Positions 37,662 through 63,233 of a DNA stretch of 64,000 nucleotides are shown here, piece by piece; the first letter of the stretch is position 1; every line of letters starts with the position of its first letter. The stretch is from the IMG/VR virus record IMGVR_UViG_3300032782_000001, positions 1 through 64,000 of that record. The stretch is one strand, 5' to 3'. A program made the position numbers and the translations under genes. Under the pieces are notes generated by a model. That model did not search any database. It worked only from the letters and a program-made list of their open reading frames with translations, and was not told the DNA's origin.

Positions 37662-37665
37662 GGAG

Positions 37666-46285: not shown

Positions 46286-46512
46286 CTATGGGCAGTCAAA
46301 AAGCCCCTACCGTGAAATCGACTATTAGGTCCTCTCCACGAGGAGGGAATCAGAACAAGACCAGCACGTTCGTCAACGAACCGGCTGTGGAGATCACCTT
46401 GGCGAATTACCGGCATTCTCAGGTGCTATCCATCAAACAGGCGGAAGTTCTCGCCAAGAAACTCATGAAACTCGTCAACGAACACAAGGTCCGGGAGGTC
46501 ATGGAATCATGA
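46282..46512 (+). CDS. VMES-tag protein
   Basis: ends KVREVMES. Confidence 0.8.
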   Translation: MTMGSQKAPTVKSTIRSSPRGGNQNKTSTFVNEPAVEITLANYRHSQVLSIKQAEVLAKKLMKLVNEHKVREVMES

Positions 46513-46660
46513 GGCGCGAAGAAGACTGTTACCACGACTGGGAGCTCACCTACGCCGACGGCCCGCTCGATACTTCCGACTGGAAGTGCAAATGCTGTGG
46601 GAAGCATGTCGTCGGACAACGAGGGCAAGAGCCTCCTCCTGCCCGCGACAACGAGGAGTC

Positions 46661-46897
46661 ATGAAAGCGATTGCTCCCGAGAGCCTCACGGAGTCTCTCA
46701 ACGAGATCATCTCTACATGCATTCACGGACCTGGAGGTGACCCTGACCGTTGCCATATGAGGGCCGCCGCTAAAGCATTCGTCCTCCTGCGGCGCATGGG
46801 ACTCCCCATCCATGGGGAGGAGGATTATGAAGATCAGCTGAGGAAGTGCAATGCCTCGGAAGTTGACTTCCTGGCAGAAGAAGGGCTCCCCGAATGA
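46661..46897 (+). CDS. hypothetical protein
   Basis: SD GAGGAG; ATGA overlaps. Confidence 0.7.
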   Translation: MKAIAPESLTESLNEIISTCIHGPGGDPDRCHMRAAAKAFVLLRRMGLPIHGEEDYEDQLRKCNASEVDFLAEEGLPE

Positions 46898-47328
46898 AAT
46901 TCTTCGTTCCTGCCTGCGGAGATCGCATCATCCTCATGAAGCCATGGACCTTCCCTCTCTATCTGGAGAAGCGGAACATGCAATTCGCCAAAGTCCGCGG
47001 CTTGGTGGACGCCAAGGCGGATAATTGGATGGGCGTCAGGGAAGGTGATCGTTGGACTGGCAAGTACAAATCTGTAAGCATCACGCTCGGAGCCGGCACG
47101 ATCATCGAGTGTGATCGCATTTATATCCGCACTTTCAACAAGTCCCGGATCCATCTGGAAGAGGATTACGACAGCATTACCTGGAAAGTGACTAATAACG
47201 GGAAAGCCGTTCGACATGGTCGTTTCTGGGTGAAACTCCCAGATTGCTACAATATTGAATTCGAGCTCCAGGTAGACTCTCTCTATCGAGATCGGGTCAA
47301 GGTTGTCAAGGAGGTTATGGAATCGTGA
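46894..47328 (+). CDS. VMES-tag protein
   Basis: ends VVKEVMES. Confidence 0.85.
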   Translation: MKFFVPACGDRIILMKPWTFPLYLEKRNMQFAKVRGLVDAKADNWMGVREGDRWTGKYKSVSITLGAGTIIECDRIYIRTFNKSRIHLEEDYDSITWKVTNNGKAVRHGRFWVKLPDCYNIEFELQVDSLYRDRVKVVKEVMES

Positions 47329-47603
47329 AGCTGTTTCTCCCAACGGGTCGGAGATGCAACTTCAAGGTAGCTCGTGATTCCTCCAATCCACCTTCGAAAC
47401 ATGACGTAAAACTTTGCGGTGAACCAACCATTGCGTATTGGTTAACTAAACCAGATGTTATACCGTTTGACGAACATCATCAATTGGTTAAACGGTGTGA
47501 GGAGCATACTCCTAATACTCGCCATTGGATGAGCTCTCGAGGAGAGTGGTGGTCCGAGATTTCTGAACAAGAACTGATCGTATTGGAGGTGATGGAATCA
47601 TGA
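47325..47603 (+). CDS. VMES-tag protein, Zn-module type
   Basis: ends ELIVLEVMES. Confidence 0.8.
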   Translation: MKLFLPTGRRCNFKVARDSSNPPSKHDVKLCGEPTIAYWLTKPDVIPFDEHHQLVKRCEEHTPNTRHWMSSRGEWWSEISEQELIVLEVMES

Positions 47604-50448: not shown

Positions 50449-50733
50449 AAGAATACTTTTAGCAATATTTGTTCCATATTGGTGAATTCATTCTAACGGT
50501 TAAGTGTGCCAACCTGTATCAGGTTGAATATGACTAATAATAATGTATATCATGATTCTTCCAAGAACACTCGTTCCGACCGATGGAAATTCTGGTGTCA
50601 GCAGGGTACCGATTTTAGGAACAGACCTCAGGAATCCTGGTAGGTTACGCTAAATGGCACCTCTCCGAGGTACTATTTAATAGCCCCGGTTCTTGAGAAG
50701 GTCCGGCTTTTTAGGATCGGGGCTGTTAAATAC

Positions 50734-51120
50734 ATGTCGGACTGTCCCAAAGACTTGGTGTTTCCGTTCCATTATGAGAGCGGTGGAATTTCTTGGCACT
50801 TGGAACGGCCCCTCCGTGAAGGTGGTCGGTTTTCAACATCGGTCAACGGGATAACATCTGAATTCTGGCTGACGGGATCTGAACGTTGGTCCGGCCGACG
50901 CCGGATTCTTCCTGGTTTAATCCGTCGTTTTGTTCGAAAATGCCGGAAACTTCGGCCTGGTCACATATGGTCAGTCCAGTCTCTAGATTTCGGGACTTGG
51001 GGAGTCTCGTGTGTCCATTGTGGACTCAATCAACATTGGGTTCCAAGATTCCGTGATGTCCCTGATCTCGGTACCCTGAATTGCAGAATGCGTCAGGTAT
51101 CTCAAGTGATGGAGAGTTGA
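50734..51120 (+). CDS. VMES-tag protein
   Basis: ends VSQVMES (Ser codon AGT). Confidence 0.8.
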   Translation: MSDCPKDLVFPFHYESGGISWHLERPLREGGRFSTSVNGITSEFWLTGSERWSGRRRILPGLIRRFVRKCRKLRPGHIWSVQSLDFGTWGVSCVHCGLNQHWVPRFRDVPDLGTLNCRMRQVSQVMES

Positions 51121-51130
51121 CGGAGGGCTA

Positions 51131-51415
51131 ATGACCTCTGTAATCGGAATCGAACAAGTTATTGCTTGCCTCTGTCAAAGGAAAATTTCTTTGGTCGATG
51201 AAATTCATCAGCGGGACGAAGCCGATATGGCTCTGGCGGATCTCTTCGGGGGATCCGAAATCATGTTGGACCTTTCTAAAGAATTCCGATCAGATGGTGC
51301 CTGGTTGATTGTCACCTGGTGGTTAGAAACTGAAATGGAACAATCTCAATTTGAGGTTCCTGTGGAAATGCTTTGTCCTGGAAACGAATCTGTTTTGATT
51401 GTTATGCTTTCTTAA
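51131..51415 (+). CDS. VMES-tag protein (variant)
   Basis: ends VLIVMLS. Confidence 0.65.
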   Translation: MTSVIGIEQVIACLCQRKISLVDEIHQRDEADMALADLFGGSEIMLDLSKEFRSDGAWLIVTWWLETEMEQSQFEVPVEMLCPGNESVLIVMLS

Positions 51416-51496
51416 ATATATGGCATATATTAAAACGACCCTTCTGCCATATATTCACGGTATGCCACATATTTAAACGATCCCTGCCATGCGTCC

Positions 51497-51925
51497 ATGC
51501 GATTTCAGTTCTTGAGCGTAAGATCTGACGTGGGGCAATATCGTATTGACCCGTCTCTCTTACCGGATTTGAGTGAGTTTGATACTACTAAGCCCGAACT
51601 TCAAACCCCTGCTCTTCCATCAGAGCACGTTTCGATCGTCTCAGACGGTATATTAGGTGAAGAATTCGGTGGTTGTTGGACGGTCGTTGACCGAGGGGAG
51701 CGGAGACCTCCAGGACAAAAACGATATGGGGTTGTGTCGTTTGATCATCAGCCGGCTAGGGTAATCATTCGCCCAGATCCATGGCGAGCAAAGAACGGAG
51801 CCAAGATCACTGTCGATCCCTCATCTCCTCCTGTTATTCTTTCTGAAGGAGGCCCTATGACGTATGAAGAAGCGTGCGAATCTGCTCGCCGCATGAATGA
51901 GATTTTGGAAGTTCACGAGTCTTAA
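51497..51925 (+). CDS. VMES-tag protein
   Basis: ends ILEVHES. Confidence 0.8.
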   Translation: MRFQFLSVRSDVGQYRIDPSLLPDLSEFDTTKPELQTPALPSEHVSIVSDGILGEEFGGCWTVVDRGERRPPGQKRYGVVSFDHQPARVIIRPDPWRAKNGAKITVDPSSPPVILSEGGPMTYEEACESARRMNEILEVHES

Positions 51926-52134
51926 TGCAATTTGAACGCTTCTGTACTCATTATTCCACTAATGACGCCCGGGCTCCTTGCGGTTCTCTAGCGATTTGGG
52001 CTTATGTGAATATGGATGCACCACACCCTTTACGAACTGTCAGTTTCCGCTGTGGTCTACATCTTGTGGATAATACGTTTTTCAGAAAACTTTCCATGGA
52101 AGAATGGCTGATTTTGGAAGTCCACGAATCCTGA
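51925..52134 (+). CDS. VMES-tag protein, Zn-module type
   Basis: ends EEWLILEVHES. Confidence 0.8.
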   Translation: MQFERFCTHYSTNDARAPCGSLAIWAYVNMDAPHPLRTVSFRCGLHLVDNTFFRKLSMEEWLILEVHES

Positions 52135-52400
52135 TGGGCCGATATAACCTTCGCAGCTTTTCTCCGGACGTTCCTGCTTGCTGCGGGGCTCCAGATGACG
52201 ATCCTTGCGGAGAACCATCTTCCGCATTCTTTATTCAAGAAGTTCCTTTAAGGAGTTTTTCTCCTAGGACCACTGCATGGTTCGGTGTATGCGCCGTTTG
52301 TTCATTCAAATGGCGACGCCTGATCGAGAATGAGAAAAAGCTTCGAATTAAAGAAATTTCCTACGAAGAATATATTGTCTACGAGGTCATGGCGTCATGA
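52134..52400 (+). CDS. VMES-tag protein, Zn-module type
   Basis: ends EEYIVYEVMAS. Confidence 0.8.
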   Translation: MGRYNLRSFSPDVPACCGAPDDDPCGEPSSAFFIQEVPLRSFSPRTTAWFGVCAVCSFKWRRLIENEKKLRIKEISYEEYIVYEVMAS

Positions 52401-52430
52401 AATTCGTGACTTTCTGACGTATGATCTTGA

Positions 52431-52643
52431 ATGGAGCTGACGTGTGTTAAGCGATTCCCTGATGGTACACGCTGCGGTGCAAAAGCCACCCTCGCGTATT
52501 TGACGACTGAAGGCAAACGGTTCGTCTATCGATGCGAGCAACATCCCATCAACAACAAGAAGCGGGCTTGGAATCAAGAATATATGCAGTGCCGCAAGAT
52601 TCCAATCGAAGAGGCTATCATCATGGAAGTCATGACTGCATGA
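52431..52643 (+). CDS. VMES-tag protein, Zn-module type
   Basis: ends EEAIIMEVMTA. Confidence 0.8.
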   Translation: MELTCVKRFPDGTRCGAKATLAYLTTEGKRFVYRCEQHPINNKKRAWNQEYMQCRKIPIEEAIIMEVMTA

Positions 52644-52849
52644 GTCCGGTCGAAGATTTCGAATGCGTCGTGAATGTGGAGGGAAGGGCCGCTTGCGACA
52701 AGATTGTCAGCGCTGTCCTGTTCCCCACTGACGGTTCCGAGGATCCGTGGCCCGTATGTAAGGACCACATAGATATTAATCTGTACGGCTACGGCCGGCG
52801 TGTGGGGACAATTGAAGAGTTGATCATATTTGAAGTAATGAACTCATGA
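52640..52849 (+). CDS. VMES-tag protein, Zn-module type
   Basis: ends EELIIFEVMNS. Confidence 0.8.
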   Translation: MSPVEDFECVVNVEGRAACDKIVSAVLFPTDGSEDPWPVCKDHIDINLYGYGRRVGTIEELIIFEVMNS

Positions 52850-53205
52850 CTCGGACGATGCACGGGAAGAATCTCAGTGATGATGGGTTTGACTCATACA
52901 TTCAGACCCTTCTCCGTGCAAAATCCCAACCTGACCGAATGCGAACGCTGGAATGGATTATTGAAATCCAGACTTCACGAATACGTGGTATTATCATCCG
53001 GTTCACGTTATACTTTATTCTGAACATTTGTGGGATCTGGTATCTTGGAACCAATTTCGTCAAAGAACCATGCTGGGGTTCTGGAACCGAGTTCGCATTC
53101 CTGGCCATTTTCGGAGGTGTCGTCCTCGTCCATGACTTGTCCAAAATTCGGAACATCAGGAAATCATTGCGGGAAGCAATCGTGGCTTCCGTGATGGAAT
53201 CATGA
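52846..53205 (+). CDS. VMES-tag membrane protein (2 TM)
   Basis: two hydrophobic segments; ends IVASVMES. Confidence 0.8.
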   Translation: MTRTMHGKNLSDDGFDSYIQTLLRAKSQPDRMRTLEWIIEIQTSRIRGIIIRFTLYFILNICGIWYLGTNFVKEPCWGSGTEFAFLAIFGGVVLVHDLSKIRNIRKSLREAIVASVMES

Positions 53206-53208
53206 TTC

Positions 53209-53430
53209 ATGACTGTCCTTTGTACTGAGCCTCGGCTTCCAGGAGAGACTCCGAGTCACGACTGGCAGAAAAAACGTGATTGGCACGGGGACTGGACTGG
53301 AAAATGGATTTGTTCTAATTGCAAGGAAATTCGAACTAACTGTAAACATGCGAATGGCGATTGGACGGGTCTCTTCATGGAAGATTGTCAAGAGCCCGAA
53401 TGTGTAGTTCGTAGTGTGATGGAATCATGA
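53209..53430 (+). CDS. VMES-tag protein, HxW/CxxC type
   Basis: ends VVRSVMES. Confidence 0.8.
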   Translation: MTVLCTEPRLPGETPSHDWQKKRDWHGDWTGKWICSNCKEIRTNCKHANGDWTGLFMEDCQEPECVVRSVMES

Positions 53431-53678
53431 GGACTCTCGATATGGACATCGTCACGCAACGAGAGCACGTAAAAACTTGGTGTGTTATTCGGGTGGATGA
53501 GAAAACCGACGCATATCCTTCTAGGTATGAAGTATTTGGCCTCGGAGATGGACAGACGGCGGAGAGACTAAGGGAAACTGGCTATGCCGAAGAAGTCCTG
53601 ATCGGTTTTCCGGATGAAGAATCGGCTACGGCAGTGGCAGAAAAACTAAACATGATCACCGAAATCATGGAATCATGA
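53427..53678 (+). CDS. VMES-tag protein
   Basis: ends ITEIMES. Confidence 0.8.
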   Translation: MRTLDMDIVTQREHVKTWCVIRVDEKTDAYPSRYEVFGLGDGQTAERLRETGYAEEVLIGFPDEESATAVAEKLNMITEIMES

Positions 53679-53884
53679 GTTTTGTCCGATGCAGCCACAC
53701 TCGGACCGAGAAGGTATTCGAGGGGACTTTCTCTAATGTTGTCCATATCGAACGTTATCAATGCGAAGCTAATGCCATCGTATTCTTCACTCGTGGTGCT
53801 TTCTGCAAAGATCACGAACCGGAATCACTGGATGGTCAAATTTCCTTACAAGAATATGTCGTTCTCGAAGTCATGCGTTCATAA
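53675..53884 (+). CDS. VMES-tag protein, Zn-module type
   Basis: ends EYVVLEVMRS. Confidence 0.8.
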   Translation: MSFVRCSHTRTEKVFEGTFSNVVHIERYQCEANAIVFFTRGAFCKDHEPESLDGQISLQEYVVLEVMRS

Positions 53885-53938
53885 GTTTGGCGTTGACGCC
53901 GGTACAATAGGAAGCCACCCCATTCCCCACGGAGAATC

Positions 53939-54466
53939 ATGAGCATCTCGCATCTCATCGAGCAGAACGCGCAGCAGGATCATTCCAAGCCGGCTTGGAA
54001 GCCCGAATATCCGGCAGTCGGTTACCTCATCGCTACGGTCAAGGATGACCGCACCGAGATCGTCGAGGTCATGGCTTGGGATGAAGAGTATCCCGATATG
54101 CCCAATCGGGATCTTCTCAAGTACCCGAATCACTACGCCGTGCAGCTGTGCAAGAGCACGCACCGTCCGTTCCGGTACCACCGATTCTTCATTGGCACCA
54201 TCCTGGCCAATGGCAAGTTCGTTTTCTCTGTGGCGCCGCGCGTCGATGACTGGAAGTCCGGATCTCCCAAGGTCGATTCTGGGTCGTGGGATGCCCTCCA
54301 CAAGCTCCTCGAAGCGGCTGAGTCGTGGCAAGGTGGGGACGCATCGTTCCAGACCGATGGCTACGTCGAACGGTCTTCGGGCCCGCCTCAAACCTCTGGA
54401 TTCCGAAAGACTGGAAAGACTGAGCGTGCTCGAGCTCGAGGCAAGGCCAAGCCCAAGTCGGACTAG
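53939..54466 (+). CDS. hypothetical protein
   Basis: GC3-rich; preceded by sigma70-like TTGACG...TACAAT but with very short spacing. Confidence 0.8.
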   Translation: MSISHLIEQNAQQDHSKPAWKPEYPAVGYLIATVKDDRTEIVEVMAWDEEYPDMPNRDLLKYPNHYAVQLCKSTHRPFRYHRFFIGTILANGKFVFSVAPRVDDWKSGSPKVDSGSWDALHKLLEAAESWQGGDASFQTDGYVERSSGPPQTSGFRKTGKTERARARGKAKPKSD

Positions 54467-54472
54467 TCGATC

Positions 54473-55039
54473 GTGTCGCCGGAGATCAAATGCGATCGCG
54501 CCCTCTGGTCTACGGGAGGGAAGATCAGCACATGCGAAAAACCGGCGCATCGCTTTGTAAGCTACTCGGGTCCCCCTGGGGACCCGAGAGCTATGGCGGT
54601 TTGTGACCGCCATGCAGTAGATACAACCCGAATTGGTCCGACCAAGACTCTGACCCGCGAAGAGTTCTTCGTGTTGGCAATTTTAGGTGTTGCGGTGCTT
54701 CCTGAAGAAACCCTTGAAGAAGTTTTCGGCTTCCTTCCATCGGCTTACGATGGGCACCCTATTCTTGAAGATGAAGCTCGAGAAGCCTTGGACTGGTTGA
54801 GAAATCACCGTCAGGCTGCGCTTCGTCCTTCCGAAGAGACCAAAGAAATTTTGTTTTCTTTGACTTCCTCTCCTGGTTATGTCGAAGCCAGAGCCACGTG
54901 GCGAGATCCTCCATATCACGCAATCGAAGATTCCGAGCGTGTTGGCTTCTGGCATGGGATTCCATCGGTTGAGCAACTCTGTGAGGTCCTTCGACGCGTT
55001 TTAAAGACTGCCATCGTAATGCGAGTCATGGAATCATGA
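54473..55039 (+). CDS. VMES-tag fusion protein
   Basis: Zn module, internal TREEFFVLAIL, second domain; ends MRVMES. Confidence 0.8.
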   Translation: MSPEIKCDRALWSTGGKISTCEKPAHRFVSYSGPPGDPRAMAVCDRHAVDTTRIGPTKTLTREEFFVLAILGVAVLPEETLEEVFGFLPSAYDGHPILEDEAREALDWLRNHRQAALRPSEETKEILFSLTSSPGYVEARATWRDPPYHAIEDSERVGFWHGIPSVEQLCEVLRRVLKTAIVMRVMES

Positions 55040-55272
55040 GCTTGAATTACTGCAGTGCTTCCTTCGCTGAAGATCGAACGTTCGGGCCTGTGGTAGGTAG
55101 TCAGATCAAATTCTGCGGTCAGCTTGCCGTTCGTTGGTACATGAGCCGTAGGACCGGTCACATTGCTCAGTTTTGCAATTGTCATGCGAAAGAATATGGA
55201 GACGATGATCCAATTTGGCTTCCTCTATCATCTCAAGATGAAGCCATTGTTGCCGAAGTGATGAATTCATGA
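55036..55272 (+). CDS. VMES-tag protein, Zn-module type
   Basis: ends EAIVAEVMNS. Confidence 0.8.
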   Translation: MSLNYCSASFAEDRTFGPVVGSQIKFCGQLAVRWYMSRRTGHIAQFCNCHAKEYGDDDPIWLPLSSQDEAIVAEVMNS

Positions 55273-55514
55273 ACGCGAACGAACTCATTGCTAAGGCAAA
55301 ACAAGATCTTACCTGCATGCATGCGACCACTTGCATACACACTAAAAACCAGGTCACTTGCGGGAAGCCTGCCACTCGTGCGTTCCGTTTCCCGTTCGGA
55401 AGAATCAAGTGGTATTTGGCCTGTCCAGATCATTCCGAAGGTTCTTGGTGTGATAACGGATGGGAAGAAGTCCCTCTCGGTGAATTCGTAACTTGGGAAA
55501 TTCACGAGTTGTGA
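55269..55514 (+). CDS. VMES-tag protein, Zn-module type
   Basis: ends EFVTWEIHEL. Confidence 0.8.
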   Translation: MNANELIAKAKQDLTCMHATTCIHTKNQVTCGKPATRAFRFPFGRIKWYLACPDHSEGSWCDNGWEEVPLGEFVTWEIHEL

Positions 55515-55738
55515 CAGAACGACCTCCCTGCTCTTGTTTCATCGGAGTAGAGAAATCTCCCGATAGAATGGGATTCTGCATGGAACCTTCCATTCGTTTT
55601 TATCGAGACGGGAGAACAGTCGTTGGCATAATCTCCCGGTGTGGAAATCACCCAATTCCTGTCGATTATCTGCGTGATAATAAAATGGAAGAGGTCACTT
55701 TCGAAGAATATATCGTTAACGAAGTGATGCGTTCGTGA
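55511..55738 (+). CDS. VMES-tag protein, Zn-module type
   Basis: ends EEYIVNEVMRS. Confidence 0.8.
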   Translation: MTERPPCSCFIGVEKSPDRMGFCMEPSIRFYRDGRTVVGIISRCGNHPIPVDYLRDNKMEEVTFEEYIVNEVMRS

Positions 55739-55998
55739 AGTTACTTCACGGAGATACTGAATTCATAGAATGCCGTGGGTCACGGTGGGCACGGGTTGGC
55801 CCTCCGTGTGAAAGTTCCGGGACAATATTTGTAAAGTCGAGAGATTGGGTGGGACCCGGAACGGAAATGGCCAATGTTGAATGGCATGTTTACTGTAAAC
55901 CATGCTGGAATGCTCACAGAAAGAATATGAAGGGACTTGATGAGTTCCAGGTCATGAGTTTCGAAGAATGGATTGTGTCCATAGTGATGGAATCGTGA
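55735..55998 (+). CDS. VMES-tag protein, Zn-module type
   Basis: ends EEWIVSIVMES. Confidence 0.8.
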   Translation: MKLLHGDTEFIECRGSRWARVGPPCESSGTIFVKSRDWVGPGTEMANVEWHVYCKPCWNAHRKNMKGLDEFQVMSFEEWIVSIVMES

Positions 55999-56053
55999 AA
56001 GCTGAAAAGCTGAAACAGTTCCTTTCCGATGTGATTCCACTTATCTGAACTGT

Positions 56054-56356
56054 ATGATCGAACACCTTTGGCGGAGGTCTATTCCGCAAGACGGTGTTTG
56101 GAAATGTATTCGTTGCGGAATTGAAATCTTTTGGATCCCTGACGGGGATCAATTCACCCCATTAGACGATCCATTCTACGACAGACGTCCGTTTCCTCAC
56201 GAATCCGGTCCGGTCGTGTCTGTTTTGGATGGGGCGTATATGAACGTATCTGTTTTGGATGGGGCGTATATGAACGGGTACGACGCGTGGGAAGCTCCAT
56301 GCGGAGCTCCCAGAGATTGTGGGCTTCTGATCGTACAAAAGATTATGGAGTCTTGA
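56054..56356 (+). CDS. VMES-tag protein, HxW/CxxC type, with a 27-bp internal duplication
   Basis: VSVLDGAYMN twice; ends VQKIMES. Confidence 0.8.
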   Translation: MIEHLWRRSIPQDGVWKCIRCGIEIFWIPDGDQFTPLDDPFYDRRPFPHESGPVVSVLDGAYMNVSVLDGAYMNGYDAWEAPCGAPRDCGLLIVQKIMES

Positions 56357-56359
56357 CTT

Positions 56360-56668
56360 ATGATCTCACCGCGAAGTGCTGCGAAAATTCGTGATTTCGG
56401 ACAGGTCTACGGAGTCAGAGGCCCTCGTATGACCAAGCATCGGCTTCTGACTGATGAACTCCGTGTCCGATGTTCCATTCCCGGATGTTTGGAACCGGCT
56501 TGTTATTTTTGGGTTTGTGAGAAGGCTTCTCCGCTCCAAGGCTTGGATATTTGTACGTGGTGTCGAAATCACGTGTTGAAGGTATACCAACCTTCAACCA
56601 ATCATGTTTGGATGTCTGAATCCGTACTCATCGACATCCTGATCGTAATGGAGATCATGGAATCATGA
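56360..56668 (+). CDS. VMES-tag protein, Zn-module type
   Basis: ends IVMEIMES. Confidence 0.75.
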   Translation: MISPRSAAKIRDFGQVYGVRGPRMTKHRLLTDELRVRCSIPGCLEPACYFWVCEKASPLQGLDICTWCRNHVLKVYQPSTNHVWMSESVLIDILIVMEIMES

Positions 56669-56892
56669 AGCAGCGCGTAATCGCGAACGAAGAAAGGTGT
56701 GAATGGCTCGGCCCTTTCCGATTTCATGGCTATCAGGAGAAATGTGGTCGCAGGGCTGTTCGCTTCTATCTTTGCCATGACGGCACTGTCTCTGCTCGTT
56801 GCAAGGGCCACGTTCCTCCTGGCGTTCCCGAATCTATTTCCCAGGAGGATTGGTCTCGTTTGAAAATTGTGTCGGAAATCATGACCGCATGA
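56665..56892 (+). CDS. VMES-tag protein, Zn-module type
   Basis: ends IVSEIMTA. Confidence 0.8.
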   Translation: MKQRVIANEERCEWLGPFRFHGYQEKCGRRAVRFYLCHDGTVSARCKGHVPPGVPESISQEDWSRLKIVSEIMTA

Positions 56893-57356
56893 ACCGTTTG
56901 ATTTGTGATTTGCGGATTTGGACTGATGAGTATCAGTCCAAGAAGTGTGGTCGCGCTGCAGCCTTTTTCTTTGCCGGGTTTGACGTCCACGGCAGACTAA
57001 AAGTTCTCATCCGTTGCCGGTGGTGTGGCGATGTCCAAAAGCATTGGATCCTGGGATCACCTCCCAATCCCGGATTACGATTTCGACAAATTCCTGCATC
57101 ACAAGTTCCTGTTCTTTTGGCAATTTCCGAAATAATTAACACCACGATCGTCCAGGAAATTGCTCGGCCAATCATGCATCGATGGCGCCGGATTCGGAAA
57201 ACTGTCAAAAAACCTGCACATTATAAATGCGATCGATGTGACCGCGTGTGTGAAGGTAATGCCCGACCAACGGATTCTATCATGATGAGAGACCCTGTGA
57301 CAGGTGTCCGGCGAACCTGTGATGAAGAAATTATCGCGGCGGTTATGGAATCATGA
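56889..57356 (+). CDS. VMES-tag protein with two fused modules
   Basis: ends CDEEIIAAVMES. Confidence 0.8.
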   Translation: MNRLICDLRIWTDEYQSKKCGRAAAFFFAGFDVHGRLKVLIRCRWCGDVQKHWILGSPPNPGLRFRQIPASQVPVLLAISEIINTTIVQEIARPIMHRWRRIRKTVKKPAHYKCDRCDRVCEGNARPTDSIMMRDPVTGVRRTCDEEIIAAVMES

Positions 57357-57562
57357 GTAGGACTCGAGATTCAAGCCGGTGTGAACATCGATTTTCTCAG
57401 GAGTCTGCTGCATATAGACTAAAGAATGTCACAGTTCAATCTTGTGATCGATGCAAACTGAATATCTTCCGTTGTTCCCGGTGCAAGCAATTGGTTTTGA
57501 AGGCTCAAAAGTTCCAATGCATCAATAATCTTTGCATTGTAGCCGATATTATGGAATCATGA
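57353..57562 (+). CDS. VMES-tag Cys-rich protein
   Basis: ends IVADIMES. Confidence 0.8.
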   Translation: MSRTRDSSRCEHRFSQESAAYRLKNVTVQSCDRCKLNIFRCSRCKQLVLKAQKFQCINNLCIVADIMES

Positions 57563-57723
57563 GTAACAATGTAATGTCTATGGTGATCAATGGCATGCTC
57601 GGAATTTTCGCAGCAGTTGGATGGGCCCTAGCAATACTGGAACTTGGCGTCATTGTCTTATTTTTCAGTTGGTTCATGAGCGGGGCTTGGTATCGATGGA
57701 AGCATCGAATCCCAAAGTCATAG
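57559..57723 (+). CDS. small membrane protein
   Basis: hydrophobic; ATGA overlap. Confidence 0.65.
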   Translation: MSNNVMSMVINGMLGIFAAVGWALAILELGVIVLFFSWFMSGAWYRWKHRIPKS

Positions 57724-57935
57724 GAGAATGTCCATGGTCCCTTTGGGACGGTCAACATGATTTCCAAGCGGGGGTTCTCGTAAGTCTAGCCCCGGGAGCC
57801 GTCCGGATTTCTTGTTGCTTTTGCGGATTGGAATGGCACCAGTGTCCACACGGTTGGCTTTGGGATTTTGCCACTGATGGCTCTCTTTGTCCCATCTGCG
57901 GACTGAAGATAGTGGAAACGATCATGGAATCATGA
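57696..57935 (+). CDS. VMES-tag Cys-rich protein
   Basis: ends IVETIMES. Confidence 0.7.
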   Translation: MEASNPKVIGECPWSLWDGQHDFQAGVLVSLAPGAVRISCCFCGLEWHQCPHGWLWDFATDGSLCPICGLKIVETIMES

Positions 57936-58159
57936 ACAGTTTTCTTCGAGATCCCAATTCTCCACCTCACCATTGGAAGCGTGTTCCAGGTGATTGGGGT
58001 CGATGGAAATGTGAAAAATGTGAGTCTCTTTACCCGGGTTCACAGAATCCGCATCCTGATCCAAATGCGGACACTCCAGATCCTTACATGAAGTCCTGGT
58101 GTGGAGGTAAATTCTTGAGTTGCGACGAGATTGTAGTCTGGGCAGTCCAAGAAGAATGA
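57932..58159 (+). CDS. VMES-tag protein, HxW/CxxC type (variant)
   Basis: ends CDEIVVWAVQEE. Confidence 0.75.
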   Translation: MNSFLRDPNSPPHHWKRVPGDWGRWKCEKCESLYPGSQNPHPDPNADTPDPYMKSWCGGKFLSCDEIVVWAVQEE

Positions 58160-58365
58160 GAATTACCTGCGAATGGGTAGTAGCTGACTTGACATTTCGT
58201 TGTCCTGAGGACGCCGTAATTGGAATAGTCGGATCCTTTCCTGGTGGGACGATTAGGGAAGTTTACTGTCAGGCTCATTACGAATGTGTGGTCGGTATTC
58301 TCGACAGCTGTTTGGAGACTATGTCTGTAGGTGAGTTTTTGGTTCGAGAAATTCATGATTCTTGA
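58156..58365 (+). CDS. VMES-tag protein, Zn-module type
   Basis: ends EFLVREIHDS. Confidence 0.8.
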   Translation: MRITCEWVVADLTFRCPEDAVIGIVGSFPGGTIREVYCQAHYECVVGILDSCLETMSVGEFLVREIHDS

Positions 58366-58385
58366 TTTCGGCGTAAAATGGGTCT

Positions 58386-58610
58386 GTGATTCCGTCCCAT
58401 AAATGCAATAATTCAGTTCAATTCGGATGGGATGCCGCACTTTGCGGAAGTCTCGCAATTCGAGTCTTCAGGGACCTTCGTCCGCATTCCACTAACGTGA
58501 AATATCTATGCGAACGTTGTTTCAAAGAAGAGCGTGAGAGGCTTCAAAAAGCTGGAATGACCGAAATGTCTTTAGAAGAAGACGTCGTTTATGGGGTCAT
58601 GGAATCATGA
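58386..58610 (+). CDS. VMES-tag protein, Zn-module type
   Basis: ends EEDVVYGVMES. Confidence 0.8.
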   Translation: MIPSHKCNNSVQFGWDAALCGSLAIRVFRDLRPHSTNVKYLCERCFKEERERLQKAGMTEMSLEEDVVYGVMES

Positions 58611-58912
58611 CTGTCCCGGATGTTCGAAACCAGACGGAAGTAGAAGCAGGATCCAATTACCATAAGTCTTGGATATACGTCCTACACTCATCTCTTGATC
58701 GCGTTAGTGATAGTCCTTTCCGATCTATTTGTCCTGCTTGTGATCGAGGACTCTTACTAGTCAAGCGAGATCACACACTAGAATACTGTTTTCGGATCGA
58801 CAATTGTTCCTTGTGCGGTCAAATCGTTGTTTACGAAGATGACAATATTGGTGGAATCAGCCTCCACCCATCCCTCAATGAATGTTTGGTTGCGGAGGTA
58901 ATGGATTCATGA
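58607..58912 (+). CDS. VMES-tag zinc-ribbon protein
   Basis: CPAC...CSLC; ends LVAEVMDS. Confidence 0.8.
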   Translation: MTVPDVRNQTEVEAGSNYHKSWIYVLHSSLDRVSDSPFRSICPACDRGLLLVKRDHTLEYCFRIDNCSLCGQIVVYEDDNIGGISLHPSLNECLVAEVMDS

Positions 58913-59193
58913 ACGACGGTTTCATTTATGAGTTCATTGCAAAGGAACGAGAGATTATCAGGAAAACACAGTTAGAAGTCAGGATTGTAGGAACACTTTC
59001 TATTTGTGCAGGAATAGCTGGCGTTGTTGGACATGCCACCATTCGCATCTATGGAGTGGAATGGTGGAGAGGAATATTCACTGTTGTATGCATTGTGTTG
59101 TGTCCTCATTTCGCTAAATGGTGGTGGGATGAGCGGAACCACGTTAAGCAATTGGAGAAGAATTTGTTGGTGTTTGAGGTCATGGAATCATGA
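58909..59193 (+). CDS. VMES-tag membrane protein (2 TM)
   Basis: ends LVFEVMES. Confidence 0.8.
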   Translation: MNDGFIYEFIAKEREIIRKTQLEVRIVGTLSICAGIAGVVGHATIRIYGVEWWRGIFTVVCIVLCPHFAKWWWDERNHVKQLEKNLLVFEVMES

Positions 59194-59378
59194 TCGAACA
59201 CCAGTGGCTTTGGAAGAGAATGAGTAAGACGGGGAGTGATAATATCTGGGTTTGTGAAAGATGCGGAACAGAATTTCCCGTAGGTACTAGTGGGTATAGG
59301 CCTGAAGTCTATATACCAACGTCCCAAACTTCGGAAGACTGTGACGTAGAAATGATTCGTCAAGTGATGGAATCATGA
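59190..59378 (+). CDS. VMES-tag protein, HxW/CxxC type
   Basis: ends MIRQVMES. Confidence 0.8.
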   Translation: MIEHQWLWKRMSKTGSDNIWVCERCGTEFPVGTSGYRPEVYIPTSQTSEDCDVEMIRQVMES

Positions 59379-59602
59379 AACTCACGAAATCCGAAATCAA
59401 GGCTCTTCTCCAGCTTTGGGAAGCTGGAATCCATAATGCTGTCGCTCCCAGCTCCAATGAGCGTCGGTTCTTCCAATCCCTCCGGCAAAAAGGGTATGCC
59501 ATTACTTTCAGTGTAAACAGAAATTTCCGAATCACTGAGAATGGAATTCTTCGAATCGAAGATCCGGCCAAACTCTTCGTGAAGGAAGTAATGGAATCAT
59601 GA
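59375..59602 (+). CDS. VMES-tag protein, winged-helix-like
   Basis: L..KGY...ITENG pattern; ends FVKEVMES. Confidence 0.8.
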   Translation: MKLTKSEIKALLQLWEAGIHNAVAPSSNERRFFQSLRQKGYAITFSVNRNFRITENGILRIEDPAKLFVKEVMES

Positions 59603-59904
59603 GTGATAGTAAGTATAGCGTACCCAAATTAGACATCGGGGACGGAGAGGTCTTCTGGTCCGATGGAGGTCAACAAGTCCGGGTCTTCGGACCGACTTCC
59701 AGTCTTCGTGGTCCATGGCGCATCATGGAGAAAGTCGCCATGAGGATTCTCCACCTCGTGGACCGACATGGCGGATATTACGATGAGTCGGACGATAAAT
59801 GTGTCAAATGTCGCATGATTCGGGCCTTCCGTCAACAATTTGGAGGAGCTCTTGTTATGAAACAAGAGACAATTGACCACATGGTCCAAAATCCGAACGC
59901 CTGA
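59599..59904 (+). CDS. hypothetical protein
   Basis: ATGA overlap. Confidence 0.7.
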   Translation: MSDSKYSVPKLDIGDGEVFWSDGGQQVRVFGPTSSLRGPWRIMEKVAMRILHLVDRHGGYYDESDDKCVKCRMIRAFRQQFGGALVMKQETIDHMVQNPNA

Positions 59905-59922
59905 CTTGCACCGGGGGCTCAC

Positions 59923-60327
59923 GTGCCCACCCATCTTCCACAACCTGAAGGATCTAGTCTATGTGGTCATTGCTGCATAGCTATGATTCTCGGTATTAAC
60001 CTGGAAAAAGCCATATCCATCGTTGGACACCAACGTGGTTCGAAGAATTCGGAGTTAATATCAGCACTGGGTTCTTATGCTAAAACCACCAAGAGTATTC
60101 GAATATCCGGCAACCCTTTGGATCCATCCATACTCCGGATCAAAGGGCAAACAGGACGACATCATGTAGTGTTGCTACATGATCGGTTAATCTACGATCC
60201 TGGCGTTCCCCGATTTGTTCCATACTATGCTTGGGAACATTGGGTATTGGGTCGCGGATGGCGCATCGTAAGTCAAATCCCACTCCACTCGAATTCACCG
60301 GGGTTCAAACTAACGAATCTTGGATGA
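59923..60327 (+). CDS. peptidase C39-like protein
   Basis: Q...CGHCCIAM, HVVL, IYDP pattern. Confidence 0.65.
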   Translation: MPTHLPQPEGSSLCGHCCIAMILGINLEKAISIVGHQRGSKNSELISALGSYAKTTKSIRISGNPLDPSILRIKGQTGRHHVVLLHDRLIYDPGVPRFVPYYAWEHWVLGRGWRIVSQIPLHSNSPGFKLTNLG

Positions 60328-60799
60328 TTTCCATTTCCCCTTTCGGGATTCCATTTTTGGCAAGAGAAGAATTGGAATATCTTCCATCGAAGGTAACTTC
60401 TTGTCCCACCCAAGAAGGAAGTTCAAATGACTCATTGGGGGAAACAAGTTCAATTTCCGCAGTCCACAGTCCCTGAAGGTCCCCGAGATATTGATCCACT
60501 TCCCATTTGTGCCCGGAATGTTCGATAACGAATCGATTCTTTTCGAGTTTATGCTGACATAGAAGGAGAAGGTCTTCGCCATCTTTGACTGGAATTTCAT
60601 ACTCGAATTCTTGGCGCGACATTTTTCCAGGTCCCTTAATGGTGAGGAATGCGCTGGTATACGCCAACCTCACGCGTACGGTGGCCGTCCCTGAATCCGA
60701 CAAATACCCTTGTCGGAACCAAAGCCCGGTAGGGAGTGGCGGAAGTGCATTGATTTGAATAAGAAATTTTCGCTCGATCTCGAGATTTCCGGGCTTCAT
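60305..60799 (-). CDS. CYTH-domain triphosphate tunnel metalloenzyme
   Basis: EIERKFL, VRVR, EFEYEI, EK.R, WEVD, AEIE, YSN. Confidence 0.9.
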   Translation of the reverse strand: MKPGNLEIERKFLIQINALPPLPTGLWFRQGYLSDSGTATVRVRLAYTSAFLTIKGPGKMSRQEFEYEIPVKDGEDLLLLCQHKLEKNRFVIEHSGHKWEVDQYLGDLQGLWTAEIELVSPNESFELPSWVGQEVTFDGRYSNSSLAKNGIPKGEMEIIQDSLV

Positions 60800-60831
60800 G
60801 CCTGAAACTACAGTGAGCGTACGATCATGTC

Positions 60832-61143
60832 GTGGTCCAAACGCATTCAATCCCAGATGCTTGCCCTATTTGTGAACGCCCGAATTATCGGCCGTCAGAT
60901 CACCACATGATCCCGCGGAGTCGTGGGGGAAGATCCACTGAGACAATTTGCGGTGACTGTCATAAGGCCGTTCATGCCACTTTCACCAATAAGCAACTTG
61001 AACGCGAGTTCCACACAGTAGAAGCGCTCATGGGCCACGATGGCTTTTCTCGTATGGTGGCTTTCATCAGGAAACAAGATCCTATGAGAAAAATTACGAC
61101 CAAACGATCCAGGGATACCCGTCGTCGCGGCAGGTCCGGATGA
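60832..61143 (+). CDS. HNH endonuclease-like protein
   Basis: CPIC...DHHMIPRSRGG...ICGDCHKAVH. Confidence 0.8.
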   Translation: MVQTHSIPDACPICERPNYRPSDHHMIPRSRGGRSTETICGDCHKAVHATFTNKQLEREFHTVEALMGHDGFSRMVAFIRKQDPMRKITTKRSRDTRRRGRSG

Positions 61144-61358
61144 CTCCTCCTTTCAACGTAGTAATTTTATACGCATTTGGATCCGTTGTAACGGCCGCGA
61201 TTCTCATGAACATGGTGTCGGATGAACCTTCCGACCCTGGACCGTGGCCTTTGCATCTAAGGATCTTTTTCTTTATTGTATTTCTGCTCTGGCCATTACC
61301 GTGGCTTTTCGTGATTGCTCTAGCTTTACTCGGTCATACTAAACGACGCAAGTTCTGA
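61140..61358 (+). CDS. small membrane protein
   Basis: two hydrophobic helices. Confidence 0.7.
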   Translation: MTPPFNVVILYAFGSVVTAAILMNMVSDEPSDPGPWPLHLRIFFFIVFLLWPLPWLFVIALALLGHTKRRKF

Positions 61359-61383
61359 TGATTCCTCGGTACATAGAGGCAGA

Positions 61384-61608
61384 ATGGCACCGTTGTCTCT
61401 CCGCATGAGTAAGTTCCTTTTGAATGTTGCTGCCATGCCTGGCGCAAAAGGGGAGTTCCGCGACGGATGGGGAAGTGCGAAAGGACTTGCTCGCCGAGGG
61501 CTCTCCACATTCCCGAAGATGTTCAATTCTCGGGAGTTTTCCGTTTCGCTCACCGAAGCGGGAGTGGAATTCGCCAAAACCCTGGATTTCCCAAATCCCA
61601 ATGGGTAA
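61384..61608 (+). CDS. small winged-helix-like protein
   Basis: L.RRGL...LTEAG pattern. Confidence 0.6.
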   Translation: MAPLSLRMSKFLLNVAAMPGAKGEFRDGWGSAKGLARRGLSTFPKMFNSREFSVSLTEAGVEFAKTLDFPNPNG

Positions 61609-61870
61609 GCCTGAAACTTTTGCCGGTGAGAAAGTTCTGAACCGAGCTGTCGCTAGGTTCAGGACCGGAGTCCGTAAACCATTCCAATTCAATGGGAAAA
61701 CTTTTGAATTGACAAATGGAGTGTCAGAAGACGGATTCCTATCTGTTCGAGTACAAACTCAATCTAATTCACCACCATTTTCGAAGTGGATGCAGTTGCG
61801 AACCTTGGATGCTTCTGGTCTGCTTGAAGCAATCAATATGTTCGTCATTTCCGAAGTCATGGAGTCCTGA
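61601..61870 (+). CDS. VMES-tag protein
   Basis: ends VISEVMES. Confidence 0.8.
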   Translation: MGKPETFAGEKVLNRAVARFRTGVRKPFQFNGKTFELTNGVSEDGFLSVRVQTQSNSPPFSKWMQLRTLDASGLLEAINMFVISEVMES

Positions 61871-61880
61871 ACGGGACTCT

Positions 61881-62168
61881 ATGTTCGCAAACTACGGTGC
61901 CTCAGGAGTATCGAAATCCATGACGCCTGACGAGATCCGGTCGAAGGTAGTTGTCTTGCTCTCCAAGAGCCATCCGGGGGAAGATGTAAAGGTGGACGTT
62001 GGAAACGTCCCTTACGGACTCTTCGTATGGGAAGAAGGCGATCATAAGCACGTGCCCTTGAAGACTGGCGATCTATTCAAGTCGCTTGGCTTCTCCCCTG
62101 ATGTCCGTGATTGGGCCCATTCCCTTCCTATTGTTGCACTTGAATTGTCAGCACTGAAGGCGTCATAA
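61881..62168 (+). CDS. hypothetical protein
   Basis: ORF track, start trimmed to MFANY. Confidence 0.65.
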   Translation: MFANYGASGVSKSMTPDEIRSKVVVLLSKSHPGEDVKVDVGNVPYGLFVWEEGDHKHVPLKTGDLFKSLGFSPDVRDWAHSLPIVALELSALKAS

Positions 62169-62169
62169 T

Positions 62170-62358
62170 TTGCCATACGACAACGCTGGCTCAGCAATTT
62201 TCCCCTTTACAGACGTTAAATGTTGGACATCCGTAGGTCCAATATTTTGCAAACGATGCGGCGGAAGTTACTGGATTGTAGATCAGCAAACCCAAGAAGA
62301 GGCCCACACGCAACAAAAATGTGATTTGGCGATTGTGGAAGCGGTGATGGAATCATGA
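62170..62358 (+). CDS. VMES-tag protein
   Basis: ends IVEAVMES. Confidence 0.75.
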   Translation: MPYDNAGSAIFPFTDVKCWTSVGPIFCKRCGGSYWIVDQQTQEEAHTQQKCDLAIVEAVMES

Positions 62359-62687
62359 CCGTTAATGAATTGAAGAAGGCGATCATTAAGGCTAGTTGGA
62401 AACAAATTATCGATTGGACCCTCCTTATCGACACTCTCCACGAACTCAAAGACACGACTAAAGGTCGTCGCTATGCTCGTACTGGATGGAAAGACCGTCA
62501 CATCCGTCGGGGAGCCGTTCTAGCAGCTCTTTTCAGGACTTATATTCCGTTCGACTTCCAAGTGGAAGAAGCTCGCAAGCTTCTGAAGTATTACGCTGGC
62601 CAAATCCGAGCGTATGAGGGGAAAGTCCCCATGAAGACTCGTGAAGCCATTTTCAATGAATCTGCCAAAAAGTGGCAAGCGGCATGA
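62355..62687 (+). CDS. hypothetical basic protein
   Basis: ATGA overlaps. Confidence 0.75.
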   Translation: MTVNELKKAIIKASWKQIIDWTLLIDTLHELKDTTKGRRYARTGWKDRHIRRGAVLAALFRTYIPFDFQVEEARKLLKYYAGQIRAYEGKVPMKTREAIFNESAKKWQAA

Positions 62688-63013
62688 AACAAGAAGAATC
62701 CAATTGTGACTCCGAAGAATCTGAATGCCCTGGAGATGGCAAGTGTCATGGGCCTATGCGTTGGTGCACGAGGTGCGGAGAAGTCGATCTGGTCTGCGAT
62801 TTCCCGGAATGCGATTCTCATCCGAGAATTGGAGTAATTCAAAAGATTGTAGAATCATCGAGACGTGAAGTCCAAAGACTGGAATCTGAACTTCGACTCG
62901 CTCGAAAAGAACTGGATGAAGCGGAGGAAAAGCTTTACCACTATCTTCGTGGTCCTTACCGGATGACTAAAGAATCTCGTCTGGATGTTATCCGAACCGT
63001 CATGGATTCATGA
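62684..63013 (+). CDS. VMES-tag Cys-rich/coiled-coil protein
   Basis: ends IRTVMDS. Confidence 0.8.
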   Translation: MKQEESNCDSEESECPGDGKCHGPMRWCTRCGEVDLVCDFPECDSHPRIGVIQKIVESSRREVQRLESELRLARKELDEAEEKLYHYLRGPYRMTKESRLDVIRTVMDS

Positions 63014-63014
63014 G

Positions 63015-63233
63015 ATGAAACAGTTCAAGTTAGGCATTGGGCTTCACGGGATAGTGAAAAAACATCGTTGGATTCGGACGTCTGAGTCTCAACGTCAACC
63101 TGGCGATGCTTATTATTTCAAATGGAAATGTCGGCGTTGCGATACTACAACGAGTTTCCGACGCAAGAAACCCAAGTCTCCTGAGTTCGGAGACTGTGCA
63201 GAAGCTATCATCCGTCAGGTGATGGACTCGTAG
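63015..63233 (+). CDS. VMES-tag protein, HxW/CxxC type
   Basis: ends CAEAIIRQVMDS. Confidence 0.8.
   Translation: MKQFKLGIGLHGIVKKHRWIRTSESQRQPGDAYYFKWKCRRCDTTTSFRRKKPKSPEFGDCAEAIIRQVMDS

What the first reader, a model, noticed from the sequence alone, without database searches (positions are those of the whole stretch)
50734..63233. Cassette-like arrays: the tag's last codons double as the next gene's start (GTCATGGAATCATGA)
Seen: in long runs (6433-8348, 46282-48242, 51497-59904) the junction is ...(G)TNATGGA(A/T)TC-ATGA/GTGA. Ser TCA/TCG plus TGA supplies an overlapping start codon, and GAGG/GGA in the tag codons can act as an RBS. The junction GTCATG-GAAT-CATGAC is also quasi-palindromic, and a perfect 20-bp palindrome CATGGAGTCATGACTCCATG lies at 37659-37678. 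I found no copy of the promoter cassette in 50.7-64 kb. Inference: the tag DNA provides translational coupling and microhomology, so genes can be inserted, swapped or deleted as units.
Basis: partly seen in the sequence, partly recalled or inferred. Interest (0 to 1): 0.7.

Follow-up and report, generated by a model that had tools for sequence, protein, structure and literature searches.

The report
Overlapping small-gene array in jumbo phage
The repeated string GTCATGGAATCATGA is the coding sequence for the last residues (Val-Met-Glu-Ser-stop) of dozens of small jumbo-phage proteins that share a C-terminal helix, with the final Ser codon chosen so that stop and next start overlap (ATGA); this is ordinary translational coupling, and I found no sign that the DNA acts as a recombination cassette site.

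Summary
ATGGAWTCRTGA occurs 24 times in the window against 0.11 expected. In 50.7-63.2 kb, 20 of 32 tagged genes share a 4-nt ATGA/GTGA overlap with the next ORF. The window is the first 64 kb of a 436-kb jumbo-phage genome.

The "tag" is selected at protein level. It is a strictly C-terminal helix, roughly [ST]xEE-Φ-[IV]VxE[VI]M[ED]S. When no gene overlaps, the last Ser uses all six codons and the stop can be TAA or TAG. Two related phages of about 400 kb, one with 40% GC, keep the tag, as do hundreds of metagenomic small proteins. Many array genes belong to an undescribed 60-90 aa family with conserved Cys3-His (possibly zinc-binding); in its model the helix ends the fold (AF2 pLDDT 88).

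Synonymous sites in the tags match plain codon usage everywhere except the last Ser codon. So the DNA carries nothing beyond the protein sequence plus the overlapping start. Shared exact runs are short (median 6 nt, maximum 17).

- Coupling: plausible, inferred.
- RBS role: weak.
- Cassette mobility through tag microhomology: no supporting evidence; the decisive breakpoint test could not be run because no close relative is public.

The junction is ordinary. The tag and the protein family are the more interesting part.

The parts
50524..50553 (+). Sigma-70-like promoter candidate (TTGAAT-18-TATCAT) in the AT-rich gap before the array
   Evidence: Consensus scan only. Function is inferred. No promoter cassette of the 12-43 kb type lies here.
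50734..51415 (+). Two genes. 50734-51120 ends ..QVMES with Ser = AGT. 51131-51415 ends in the degenerate tag ..IVMLS. A 10-nt gap separates them.
51497..52400 (+). Three genes (tags VHES, VHES, VMAS) joined by 1-nt overlaps TAATG and TGATG
   Evidence: 51925-52134 is a type-1 family member.
52431..53205 (+). Three tagged genes (VMTA, VMNS, VMES) joined by two ATGA overlaps
   Evidence: 52431 and 52640 are type-1 family members.
53209..53884 (+). Three tagged genes (VMES, IMES, VMRS with a TAA stop) joined by two ATGA overlaps
   Evidence: The start at 53675 is the only one possible.
53939..54466 (+). Untagged 175-aa gene inside the array
   Evidence: No Pfam match.
54473..55998 (+). Five tagged genes joined by four overlaps (2 ATGA, 2 GTGA). 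54473-55039 has an internal type-1 domain that lacks the terminal motif, plus a second tag at its true C-terminus.
56054..57562 (+). Five tagged genes. 56054-56356 is followed by a 3-nt gap. 56360, 56665, 56889 and 57353 are joined by three ATGA overlaps.
57621..58365 (+). Three genes (IMES, VQEE, IHDS) joined by two ATGA overlaps
58386..59904 (+). Six genes joined by five consecutive ATGA overlaps. The first five are tagged; the last (59599-59904) is not.
59923..61358 (+). Untagged block, including a Cys/His-rich 103-aa protein at 60832-61143 that has an orthologue in G002
61424..63233 (+). Tagged genes 61424-61870, 62170-62358, 62684-63013 and 63015-63233 (TAG stop), interleaved with untagged 61881-62168 and 62355-62687. 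ATGA overlaps lie at 62355 and 62684.
37659..37678 (.). Perfect 20-bp palindrome at the end of the minus-strand tagged gene 37666-38244. The centre TCATGA (Ser-stop) is self-complementary.
   Evidence: The plus strand holds only a 5-codon mini-ORF here. In G001:121434-121457 the same palindrome is formed by two convergent tagged genes that share TCATGA.
6690..9409 (-).
   Evidence: (families D5, D15).
46282..47603 (+). Tagged genes after the DNA ligase. The ligase stop overlaps the start at 46282, and 46894-47328 overlaps 47325-47603.

Best explanation
The region is a tightly packed, probably polycistronic array of about 40 small genes of unknown function in a 436-kb jumbo phage. Most of the encoded proteins end in one conserved, strictly C-terminal amphipathic helix (..[ST]xEE-Φ-[IV]VxE[VI]M[ED]S).

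The repeated DNA string is the coding sequence of that ending. Its only extra DNA-level feature is the third base of the last Ser codon. TCA or TCG followed by TGA makes the ATGA or GTGA stop-start overlap of classical translational coupling. Ribosomes that terminate on one gene would restart on the next gene, which has no strong Shine-Dalgarno of its own.

Many array genes are very diverged paralogues of an undescribed 60-90 aa family with conserved Cys3-His (possibly zinc-binding), predicted as three strands plus the C-terminal helix. The junction format probably recurs because such genes were multiplied and kept head to tail. Nothing suggests the tag DNA is a recombination site.

**Shown:** the motif statistics, protein-level selection, the overlaps, the family and its predicted fold.
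**Inferred:** coupling, the operon structure, zinc binding, and origin by duplication.
For: **Genome type.** Jumbo phage: tail fibre, baseplate and DNA polymerase PHROGs; a virus record of 436,316 bp.

**Protein-level selection.**
- Where no overlap is used, the last Ser takes all six codons at background frequency (AGY 22% against 24%), and stops include TAA and TAG.
- Variants such as VHES, VMNS, VMTA and IHDS occur.
- The tag is kept in G002 (50% GC) and G001 (40% GC, where TAA stops, 33, are nearly as common as TGA, 37).
- Orthologues keep the tag while their bodies are only 23-55% identical.
- The motif is terminal 62 times and internal 4 times, with 3.4 expected by composition.

**No DNA-level excess.** Synonymous identity matches expectation except at the last Ser, where it is 0.47 against 0.19.

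**Overlaps.** 20 of 32 in the focal array. The overlap is also a general habit of this genome: 16% of untagged genes use it. Several starts are forced.

**Shine-Dalgarno.** The own strong SD, GGAGGTGA, is seen only at cassette-led genes.

**Protein family.**
- Profile search gives 414 hits at E <= 1e-3, nearly all 60-90 aa and ending [VI]M.S.
- AF2 gives pLDDT 87.7 with strands followed by helix 58-68.
- The second sequence type has the same topology, at low confidence.
- Related contigs hold the same overlapping arrays.
Against: - Only about 19-24 of the 104 tagged proteins in this genome are recognisable type-1 members. About 28 have no Cys/His cluster at all. The tag is therefore not merely the end of one domain family, and how unrelated bodies acquired it is unexplained.
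- Adjacent paralogues are no more alike than distant ones, so duplication is not directly visible.
- Tagged orthologues are displaced more often than untagged ones: 3/5 against 0/8.
- There are no expression or ribosome data. Gene calls are ORF-based.
Confidence: 0.75

Rival explanations
1. The tag DNA is a microhomology or recombination site that lets genes be inserted, swapped or deleted as cassettes. This would resemble PeSL-mediated shuffling in T4-type phages.
For: - The focal array (50.7-60.8 kb) has no orthologue in the 393-kb relative G002. 3 of 5 tagged orthologues, against 0 of 8 untagged backbone genes, lie at different relative positions (hypergeometric p about 0.035, my own arithmetic).
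- Bodies unrelated by BLAST share the tag: 218 of 234 are singletons.
- Some tag pairs reach 31/36 nt identity (record 3).
Against: - Synonymous sites in the tags are randomised to codon-usage expectation.
- In-register exact runs have a median of 6 nt and a maximum of 17 nt.
- No joints or indels appear in the public runs (contigs only, so this is weak evidence).
- No tyrosine recombinase, and no recent duplicates.
- The relocated gene 40893-41723 is flanked by non-coding promoter cassettes, which are better recombination substrates.
- Paralogue confusion could mimic displacement.
Confidence: 0.12
2. The junction is incidental. The C-terminal helix is an autonomous recognition signal (docking, targeting or degradation tag) read from the free C-terminus by one common partner. 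It is shared by about 100 otherwise different phage proteins, probably early ones.
For: - The motif is strictly terminal: 62 terminal against 4 internal.
- Bodies are heterogeneous, including ones with no Cys/His cluster.
- 54473-55039 lost the motif on its internal domain and carries a fresh one at its real end.
- M(-3) and S(-1) are kept while the -2 residue varies freely in L160.
- The tag is kept while bodies diverge to 22-28% identity.
Against: - In the type-1 model the helix is a confident part of the fold, so structural conservation may be enough.
- No partner has been identified and no experiment exists.
- The conserved last Ser could partly reflect the overlapping start.
Confidence: 0.3
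3. The motif is an RNA- or DNA-level signal (processing site, hairpin or terminator) that merely happens to lie in frame.
For: There are a few palindromic instances (37659-37678; the 16-mer at 35234 and 58599).
Against: - Variation is concentrated at third codon positions, and both Ser codon families are used.
- The motif is always in frame and terminal.
- It is conserved across a 40% and a 50% GC genome.
- No Rfam match. Terminator-like sites are not above the shuffle expectation.
Confidence: 0.03

Closest known systems
Translational coupling through 4-nt stop-start overlaps (ATGA), as in trpB-trpA of E. coli and in many phage operons (my own knowledge)
   Same: The stop of the upstream gene overlaps the start of the downstream gene. 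The downstream genes lack a strong SD. Long same-strand runs occur.
   Different: The four bases before the stop are fixed by a conserved protein ending (..M-E-S), so the junction looks like a 12-15 nt repeat. Coupling itself was not measured.
PeSL mobile regulatory cassettes in hyperplastic regions of T4-type phages (PMC2839356, PMC4122927)
   Same: Arrays of small ORFan genes in a variable genome region, punctuated by a short repeated sequence.
   Different: PeSLs are non-coding promoter plus stem-loop units of tens of bases, and recombination and circles were demonstrated. Here the repeat is coding, shows no DNA-level conservation beyond the protein, and has no evidence of exchange. The window's non-coding AAATTC..GGAGGTGAC cassettes (12-43 kb) are the nearer analogue.
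Virus multigene families with a variable body and a conserved C-terminal docking module, e.g. poxvirus ankyrin/PRANC (F-box-like) proteins (my own knowledge)
   Same: Many diverged paralogues share a short conserved C-terminal element.
   Different: There is no sequence or fold relation. No partner is known here. This is analogy only.
Small zinc-ribbon, B-box or ZZ-type zinc fingers
   Same: Conserved Cys3-His ligand pattern and a small beta-rich fold. The best structural neighbours are B-box and ZZ domains.
   Different: The matches are insignificant (VIA Z <= 4.2; Foldseek E > 1). There are no Pfam or PHROG hits.

Membership tests
Translationally coupled overlapping genes | Stop codon of the upstream gene overlaps the start codon of a downstream gene on the same strand | tested here: met
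   20 of 32 junctions in the focal region. The starts are forced at 53675, 55269, 55735, 56665 and 57353.
Translationally coupled overlapping genes | Translation of the downstream gene depends on translation and termination of the upstream gene | not testable with these tools
   No RNA or ribosome data; only DNA contigs are public. The weak SD at the junctions (-6.2 against -15.7 kcal/mol) is consistent with this but is not proof.
PeSL-like mobile regulatory cassettes | Non-coding promoter plus stem-loop unit between genes | tested here: not met
   The repeat lies entirely in coding sequence, and the overlapping junctions leave no intergenic bases. Promoter-like and terminator-like sites do not exceed the shuffle expectation.
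PeSL-like mobile regulatory cassettes | Indel or replacement breakpoints between close relatives fall at the repeats; mini-circles occur | tested here: inconclusive
   No close relative exists. L161 is 100% identical to L160. No joints were found in contig-only runs.
Integron gene cassettes | attC recombination sites between cassettes, and an IntI tyrosine recombinase | tested here: not met
   The 4-nt overlaps leave no space for attC. PF00589 is absent from the 436-kb genome, and the controls were positive.
C-terminal recognition tags (degron or targeting peptide) | Short conserved peptide at the extreme C-terminus of otherwise unrelated proteins | tested here: met
   62 terminal against 4 internal occurrences. 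218 of 234 bodies are singletons by BLAST. Bodies fall into heterogeneous classes.
C-terminal recognition tags (degron or targeting peptide) | A receptor, protease or transporter that recognises the tag; the tag is sufficient to confer the fate | not testable with these tools
   No partner was identified. The neighbouring MoxR-like AAA+ and DUF2201 genes are only a positional lead.
Zinc-ribbon-like small proteins | Four conserved metal ligands and a zinc-ribbon or treble-clef fold | tested here: inconclusive
   C, C, C and H are each conserved in at least 137 of the 143 representatives. AF2 gives a three-stranded sheet plus helix. There is no significant structural match. Metal binding was not tested.

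The most novel reading that the evidence does not exclude
The strictly C-terminal helix ..[IV]Vx[EQ][VI]M[ED]S-COOH is a transferable recognition signal (docking, targeting or timed degradation) required by about 100 otherwise unrelated small proteins in a clade of ~400-kb phages. The stop-start junction built on its last codon is the standard socket by which new ORFs are added to, or lost from, coupled arrays. Tag and junction together would form a plug-in gene format.
Probability: 0.2. Interest if true: 0.75.

Novelty: new variant of a known kind. Interest (0 to 1): 0.4.

Why it matters
The junction itself is textbook translational coupling, and showing this removes a tempting "mobile cassette" reading.

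What remains notable is the context. A clade of ~400-kb phages devotes tens of kilobases to up to about 100 tiny proteins that differ almost everywhere except a strictly terminal 13-residue helix. At least part of them form an undescribed Cys3-His family with hundreds of metagenomic members.

If the helix is a common address label, it would be a handle for finding the hub these proteins act through, and for identifying a large class of phage small proteins.

Tried and rejected
- **Phage database.** blastn of the array against 50,697 phage records gave no match.
- **Family libraries.** Pfam and PHROGs on 10 small array proteins, plus Pfam on 20 larger proteins (17 tagged, 3 untagged), gave nothing except a PLD-like domain in the untagged 63267-63893.
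- **Fold searches** on the type-1 model (PDB Foldseek, VIA wide, AFDB clusters, ESM Atlas) gave no significant or informative match.
- **Strain-level test.** Only two wetland runs hold the sequence, both kept as contigs. One is the likely source; the other has about 2-5x fragments at ~99% identity. No indels or joints were seen.
- **Close relative for breakpoint mapping.**
  - The 188-aa array protein finds only itself among 5.8 billion clusters.
  - No fetched locus aligns to the array at DNA level.
  - L161 is identical to L160.
  - The 16-kb and 27-kb relatives could not be fetched.
- **Tandem-duplication signal.** Adjacent type-1 genes are no more similar than non-adjacent ones in G000 (p = 0.80) or in L160 (p = 0.41).
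- **Literature.** Four searches found no description of this tag or family.
- **Not run.** I did not run a complex prediction, because I make no binding claim about any specific partner.
- **Rejected ideas.**
  - An alternative genetic code: nothing suggests one.
  - An RNA motif: no Rfam match.
  - An integron: not met.
Full report
**What the window is.** The window is the first 64 kb of a single 436,316-bp contig with 50% GC. Large ORFs elsewhere on the contig match tail-fibre, baseplate-wedge and DNA-polymerase PHROGs. The tool labels it a complete virus record. The contig ends repeat over about 127 nt. It is therefore a jumbo phage. The source is probably a wetland metagenome.

**Checking the observation.** ATGGAWTCRTGA occurs 24 times against 0.11 expected. 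The relaxed form ATGGANTCNTGA occurs 45 times on the two strands. At protein level, 48 window ORFs end in M[ED]S.

Genome-wide, about 104 ORFs end in [VI][MH][EDNKQ]S, and most lie between 0 and 100 kb. In 50,734-63,233 I count 32 genes with the tag or a near variant (VHES, VMNS, VMRS, VMTA, VMAS, IHDS, IHEL, VQEE). Twenty of them overlap the next ORF by 4 nt; three further junctions are 1-nt overlaps or 1-3-nt gaps.

For 53675, 55269, 55735, 56665 and 57353, the junction codon is the only candidate start between the upstream in-frame stop and the first Cys.

**Protein signal or DNA signal.** The evidence points clearly to a protein signal.
- Where no downstream gene overlaps, the last Ser uses all six codons at about background frequency (AGY 22% against 24%). 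Stops there are TGA, TAA and TAG in near-background proportions.
- TCA and TCG dominate only where the overlap exists, as they must.
- For pairs of tags with the same residue at a position, the chance of the same codon equals the genome's codon-usage expectation at every position except the last Ser. There it is 0.47 against 0.19 in the focal array.
- The tag is kept in two other complete phages: G002 (393 kb, 50% GC) and G001 (427 kb, 40% GC, with 33 TAA stops against 37 TGA).
- Orthologue pairs between G000 and G002 keep the tag while their bodies are 23-55% identical.
- The motif [VI]M[ED]S is terminal 62 times and internal 4 times, with 3.4 expected by composition.

**What the tagged proteins are.** BLAST of the bodies with the tag removed leaves 218 of 234 as singletons. 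Inspection and profile methods show more structure than that.

Many array genes belong to one family, which I call type 1. Its consensus is M-x4-C-x12-CGxPATxFY-x11-ARCxxH-x10-EISxEEYxVxEVMES, with C, C, C and H nearly invariant in 143 representatives.
- A profile search of 1.84 billion representatives gives 414 hits at E <= 1e-3. Nearly all are 60-90 aa and most end [VI]M.S.
- All the members I looked up are unnamed metagenomic proteins.
- AlphaFold2 on the family alignment gives pLDDT 87.7, with three strands followed by a C-terminal helix at residues 58-68, which is the tag.
- No Pfam, PHROG or structural match is significant.

A second sequence type (HxW..CxRCG..[ED]CDxx[IV]VRxVMES) models with the same topology at low confidence, pLDDT 60.

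Not all tagged proteins fit these two types. A rough classification of the 104 gives about 19 type-1-like, 26 type-2-like, 31 other Cys/His-rich and 28 with no Cys/His cluster. The protein 54473-55039 has an internal type-1 domain without the terminal motif, plus a new tag at its real end.

**The junction in relatives.** A 20.7-kb contig (L160) carries about 20 type-1 genes ending ..EE[FY][IL]VWEVM-x-S. The -2 residue is hypervariable and the junction is GTNATGNNNTC[AG]TGA, almost always with a 4-nt overlap. A 16-kb contig shows 13 consecutive 4-nt overlaps between genes of 65-95 aa, close to (one gene from) an AAA+ ATPase. The head-to-tail overlapping format is thus a conserved habit of this phage clade.

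**Coupling and the RBS idea.** The phage has its own strong SD, GGAGGTGA, placed mostly 6-8 nt before starts. It forms part of a repeated non-coding cassette (AAATTC..CGTATC..GGAGGTGAC) with 12 exact-pattern copies between 12 and 43 kb and none after 45 kb.

Anti-SD duplex energies of the 20 nt before different starts:

| Context | Mean energy (kcal/mol) |
|---|---|
| Tag-junction starts | -6.2 |
| Untagged overlap junctions | -5.9 |
| Random 20-mers | -4.0 |
| Cassette-led genes | -15.7 |

GAG rather than GAA at position -5 is slightly enriched where a gene overlaps: 11/24 against 9/44, p = 0.05. The tag therefore gives at most a weak SD, and termination-reinitiation is the likelier mode. This is an inference.

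4-nt overlaps are also common at untagged genes (16%). They are enriched 2.7-fold at tagged genes overall and more strongly in the focal array.

**The cassette hypothesis.**

Points against it:
- No DNA-level conservation beyond the coding requirement.
- In-register exact identity between focal tags has a median of 6 nt, a 90th percentile of 12 nt and a maximum of 17 nt.
- No recent duplicates, and no neighbour effect among paralogues.
- No tyrosine recombinase in the genome.
- No joints or indels in the public runs, though these are contigs only.

Points for it:
- The array at 50.7-60.8 kb is lineage-specific.
- Three of five tagged orthologues (40893, 46894, 38445) lie at different relative positions in G002, while eight untagged backbone genes are collinear.
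- The tag sits on heterogeneous bodies.

The displaced gene 40893-41723 is flanked by the non-coding promoter cassettes. These are longer and better PeSL-like candidates for recombination (PMC2839356). The decisive breakpoint test could not be run because no close relative is public.

**The palindromes.** TCATGA (Ser-stop) is its own reverse complement.
- In G001, the 24-bp palindrome at 121434-121457 is formed by two convergent tagged genes that share those six bases.
- In the window, 37659-37678 lies at the end of the minus-strand gene 37666-38244. The plus-strand half encodes only a 5-codon mini-ORF, possibly a relic.
- The 16-mer quasi-palindrome is present at only two junctions.

**Verdict.** The junction is an ordinary stop-start overlap written on top of a conserved protein ending. 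Coupling is plausible, the RBS role is weak, and cassette mobility through tag microhomology has no supporting evidence but is not excluded. The interesting residue is the strictly C-terminal helix shared by about 100 small proteins, together with the undescribed Cys3-His family.

Noticed in passing
window 12476-43136, both strands (e.g. 25848-25885, 35253-35290, 41746-41783): A repeated non-coding cassette, AAATTC-N-CGTATC-N-GGAGGTGAC, sits directly before gene starts. There are 12 exact-pattern copies and up to 18 looser ones. It looks like a phage-specific promoter joined to a perfect Shine-Dalgarno. It is the nearest PeSL-like element and flanks the relocated gene 40893-41723.
   Followed up: partly
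window 25877-27001 and 29900-31387: A MoxR-like AAA+ ATPase and a DUF2201 metallopeptidase/VWA protein lie among the tagged genes. The same pair lies within the tagged-gene region of G002 (346380-349598). On a 16-kb JGI contig a similar AAA+ ATPase gene followed by an unannotated 477-aa gene lies close to such an array. This makes the pair a positional candidate for a partner of the tag.
   Followed up: partly
window 54473-55039: This 188-aa protein has an N-terminal type-1 domain whose helix has lost the terminal motif (..TREEFFVLAILG..). It then has about 100 more residues and a new tag at the true C-terminus.
   Followed up: partly
L160:1-8007 (JGI 3300053058 contig): In this related array the residue before the last Ser is hypervariable (A, T, F, V, S, M, L, I, Y, C, E). 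W-E-V-M and the final Ser are invariant.
   Followed up: no
window 49883-49918: A 16-bp-stem hairpin followed by T-rich sequence looks like a strong intrinsic terminator. It ends the gene block before the array. A short minus-strand block and an AT-rich gap follow.
   Followed up: no
window 63267-63893 and 60832-61143: Two untagged genes: a PLD-like (PLDc_2) protein with a hydrophobic N-terminus, and a Cys/His-rich 103-aa protein with a 58%-identical orthologue in G002.
   Followed up: partly
window 11591-11667 (-): tRNA-Leu (anticodon TAA). It is the only Rfam or ARAGORN hit in the window.
   Followed up: no
G000 whole contig; window 48000-64000: GC falls from 0.52-0.58 (window 0-48 kb) to 0.46-0.51 in the array region. 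The relative G001 has 40% GC yet carries the same tag. The first 40 nt of the contig recur about 127 nt from its end (closure or terminal repeat).
   Followed up: no
G000:260000-272000 (L007): A second, smaller cluster of tagged type-2-like genes lies on the minus strand, far from the main 0-100 kb region.
   Followed up: no
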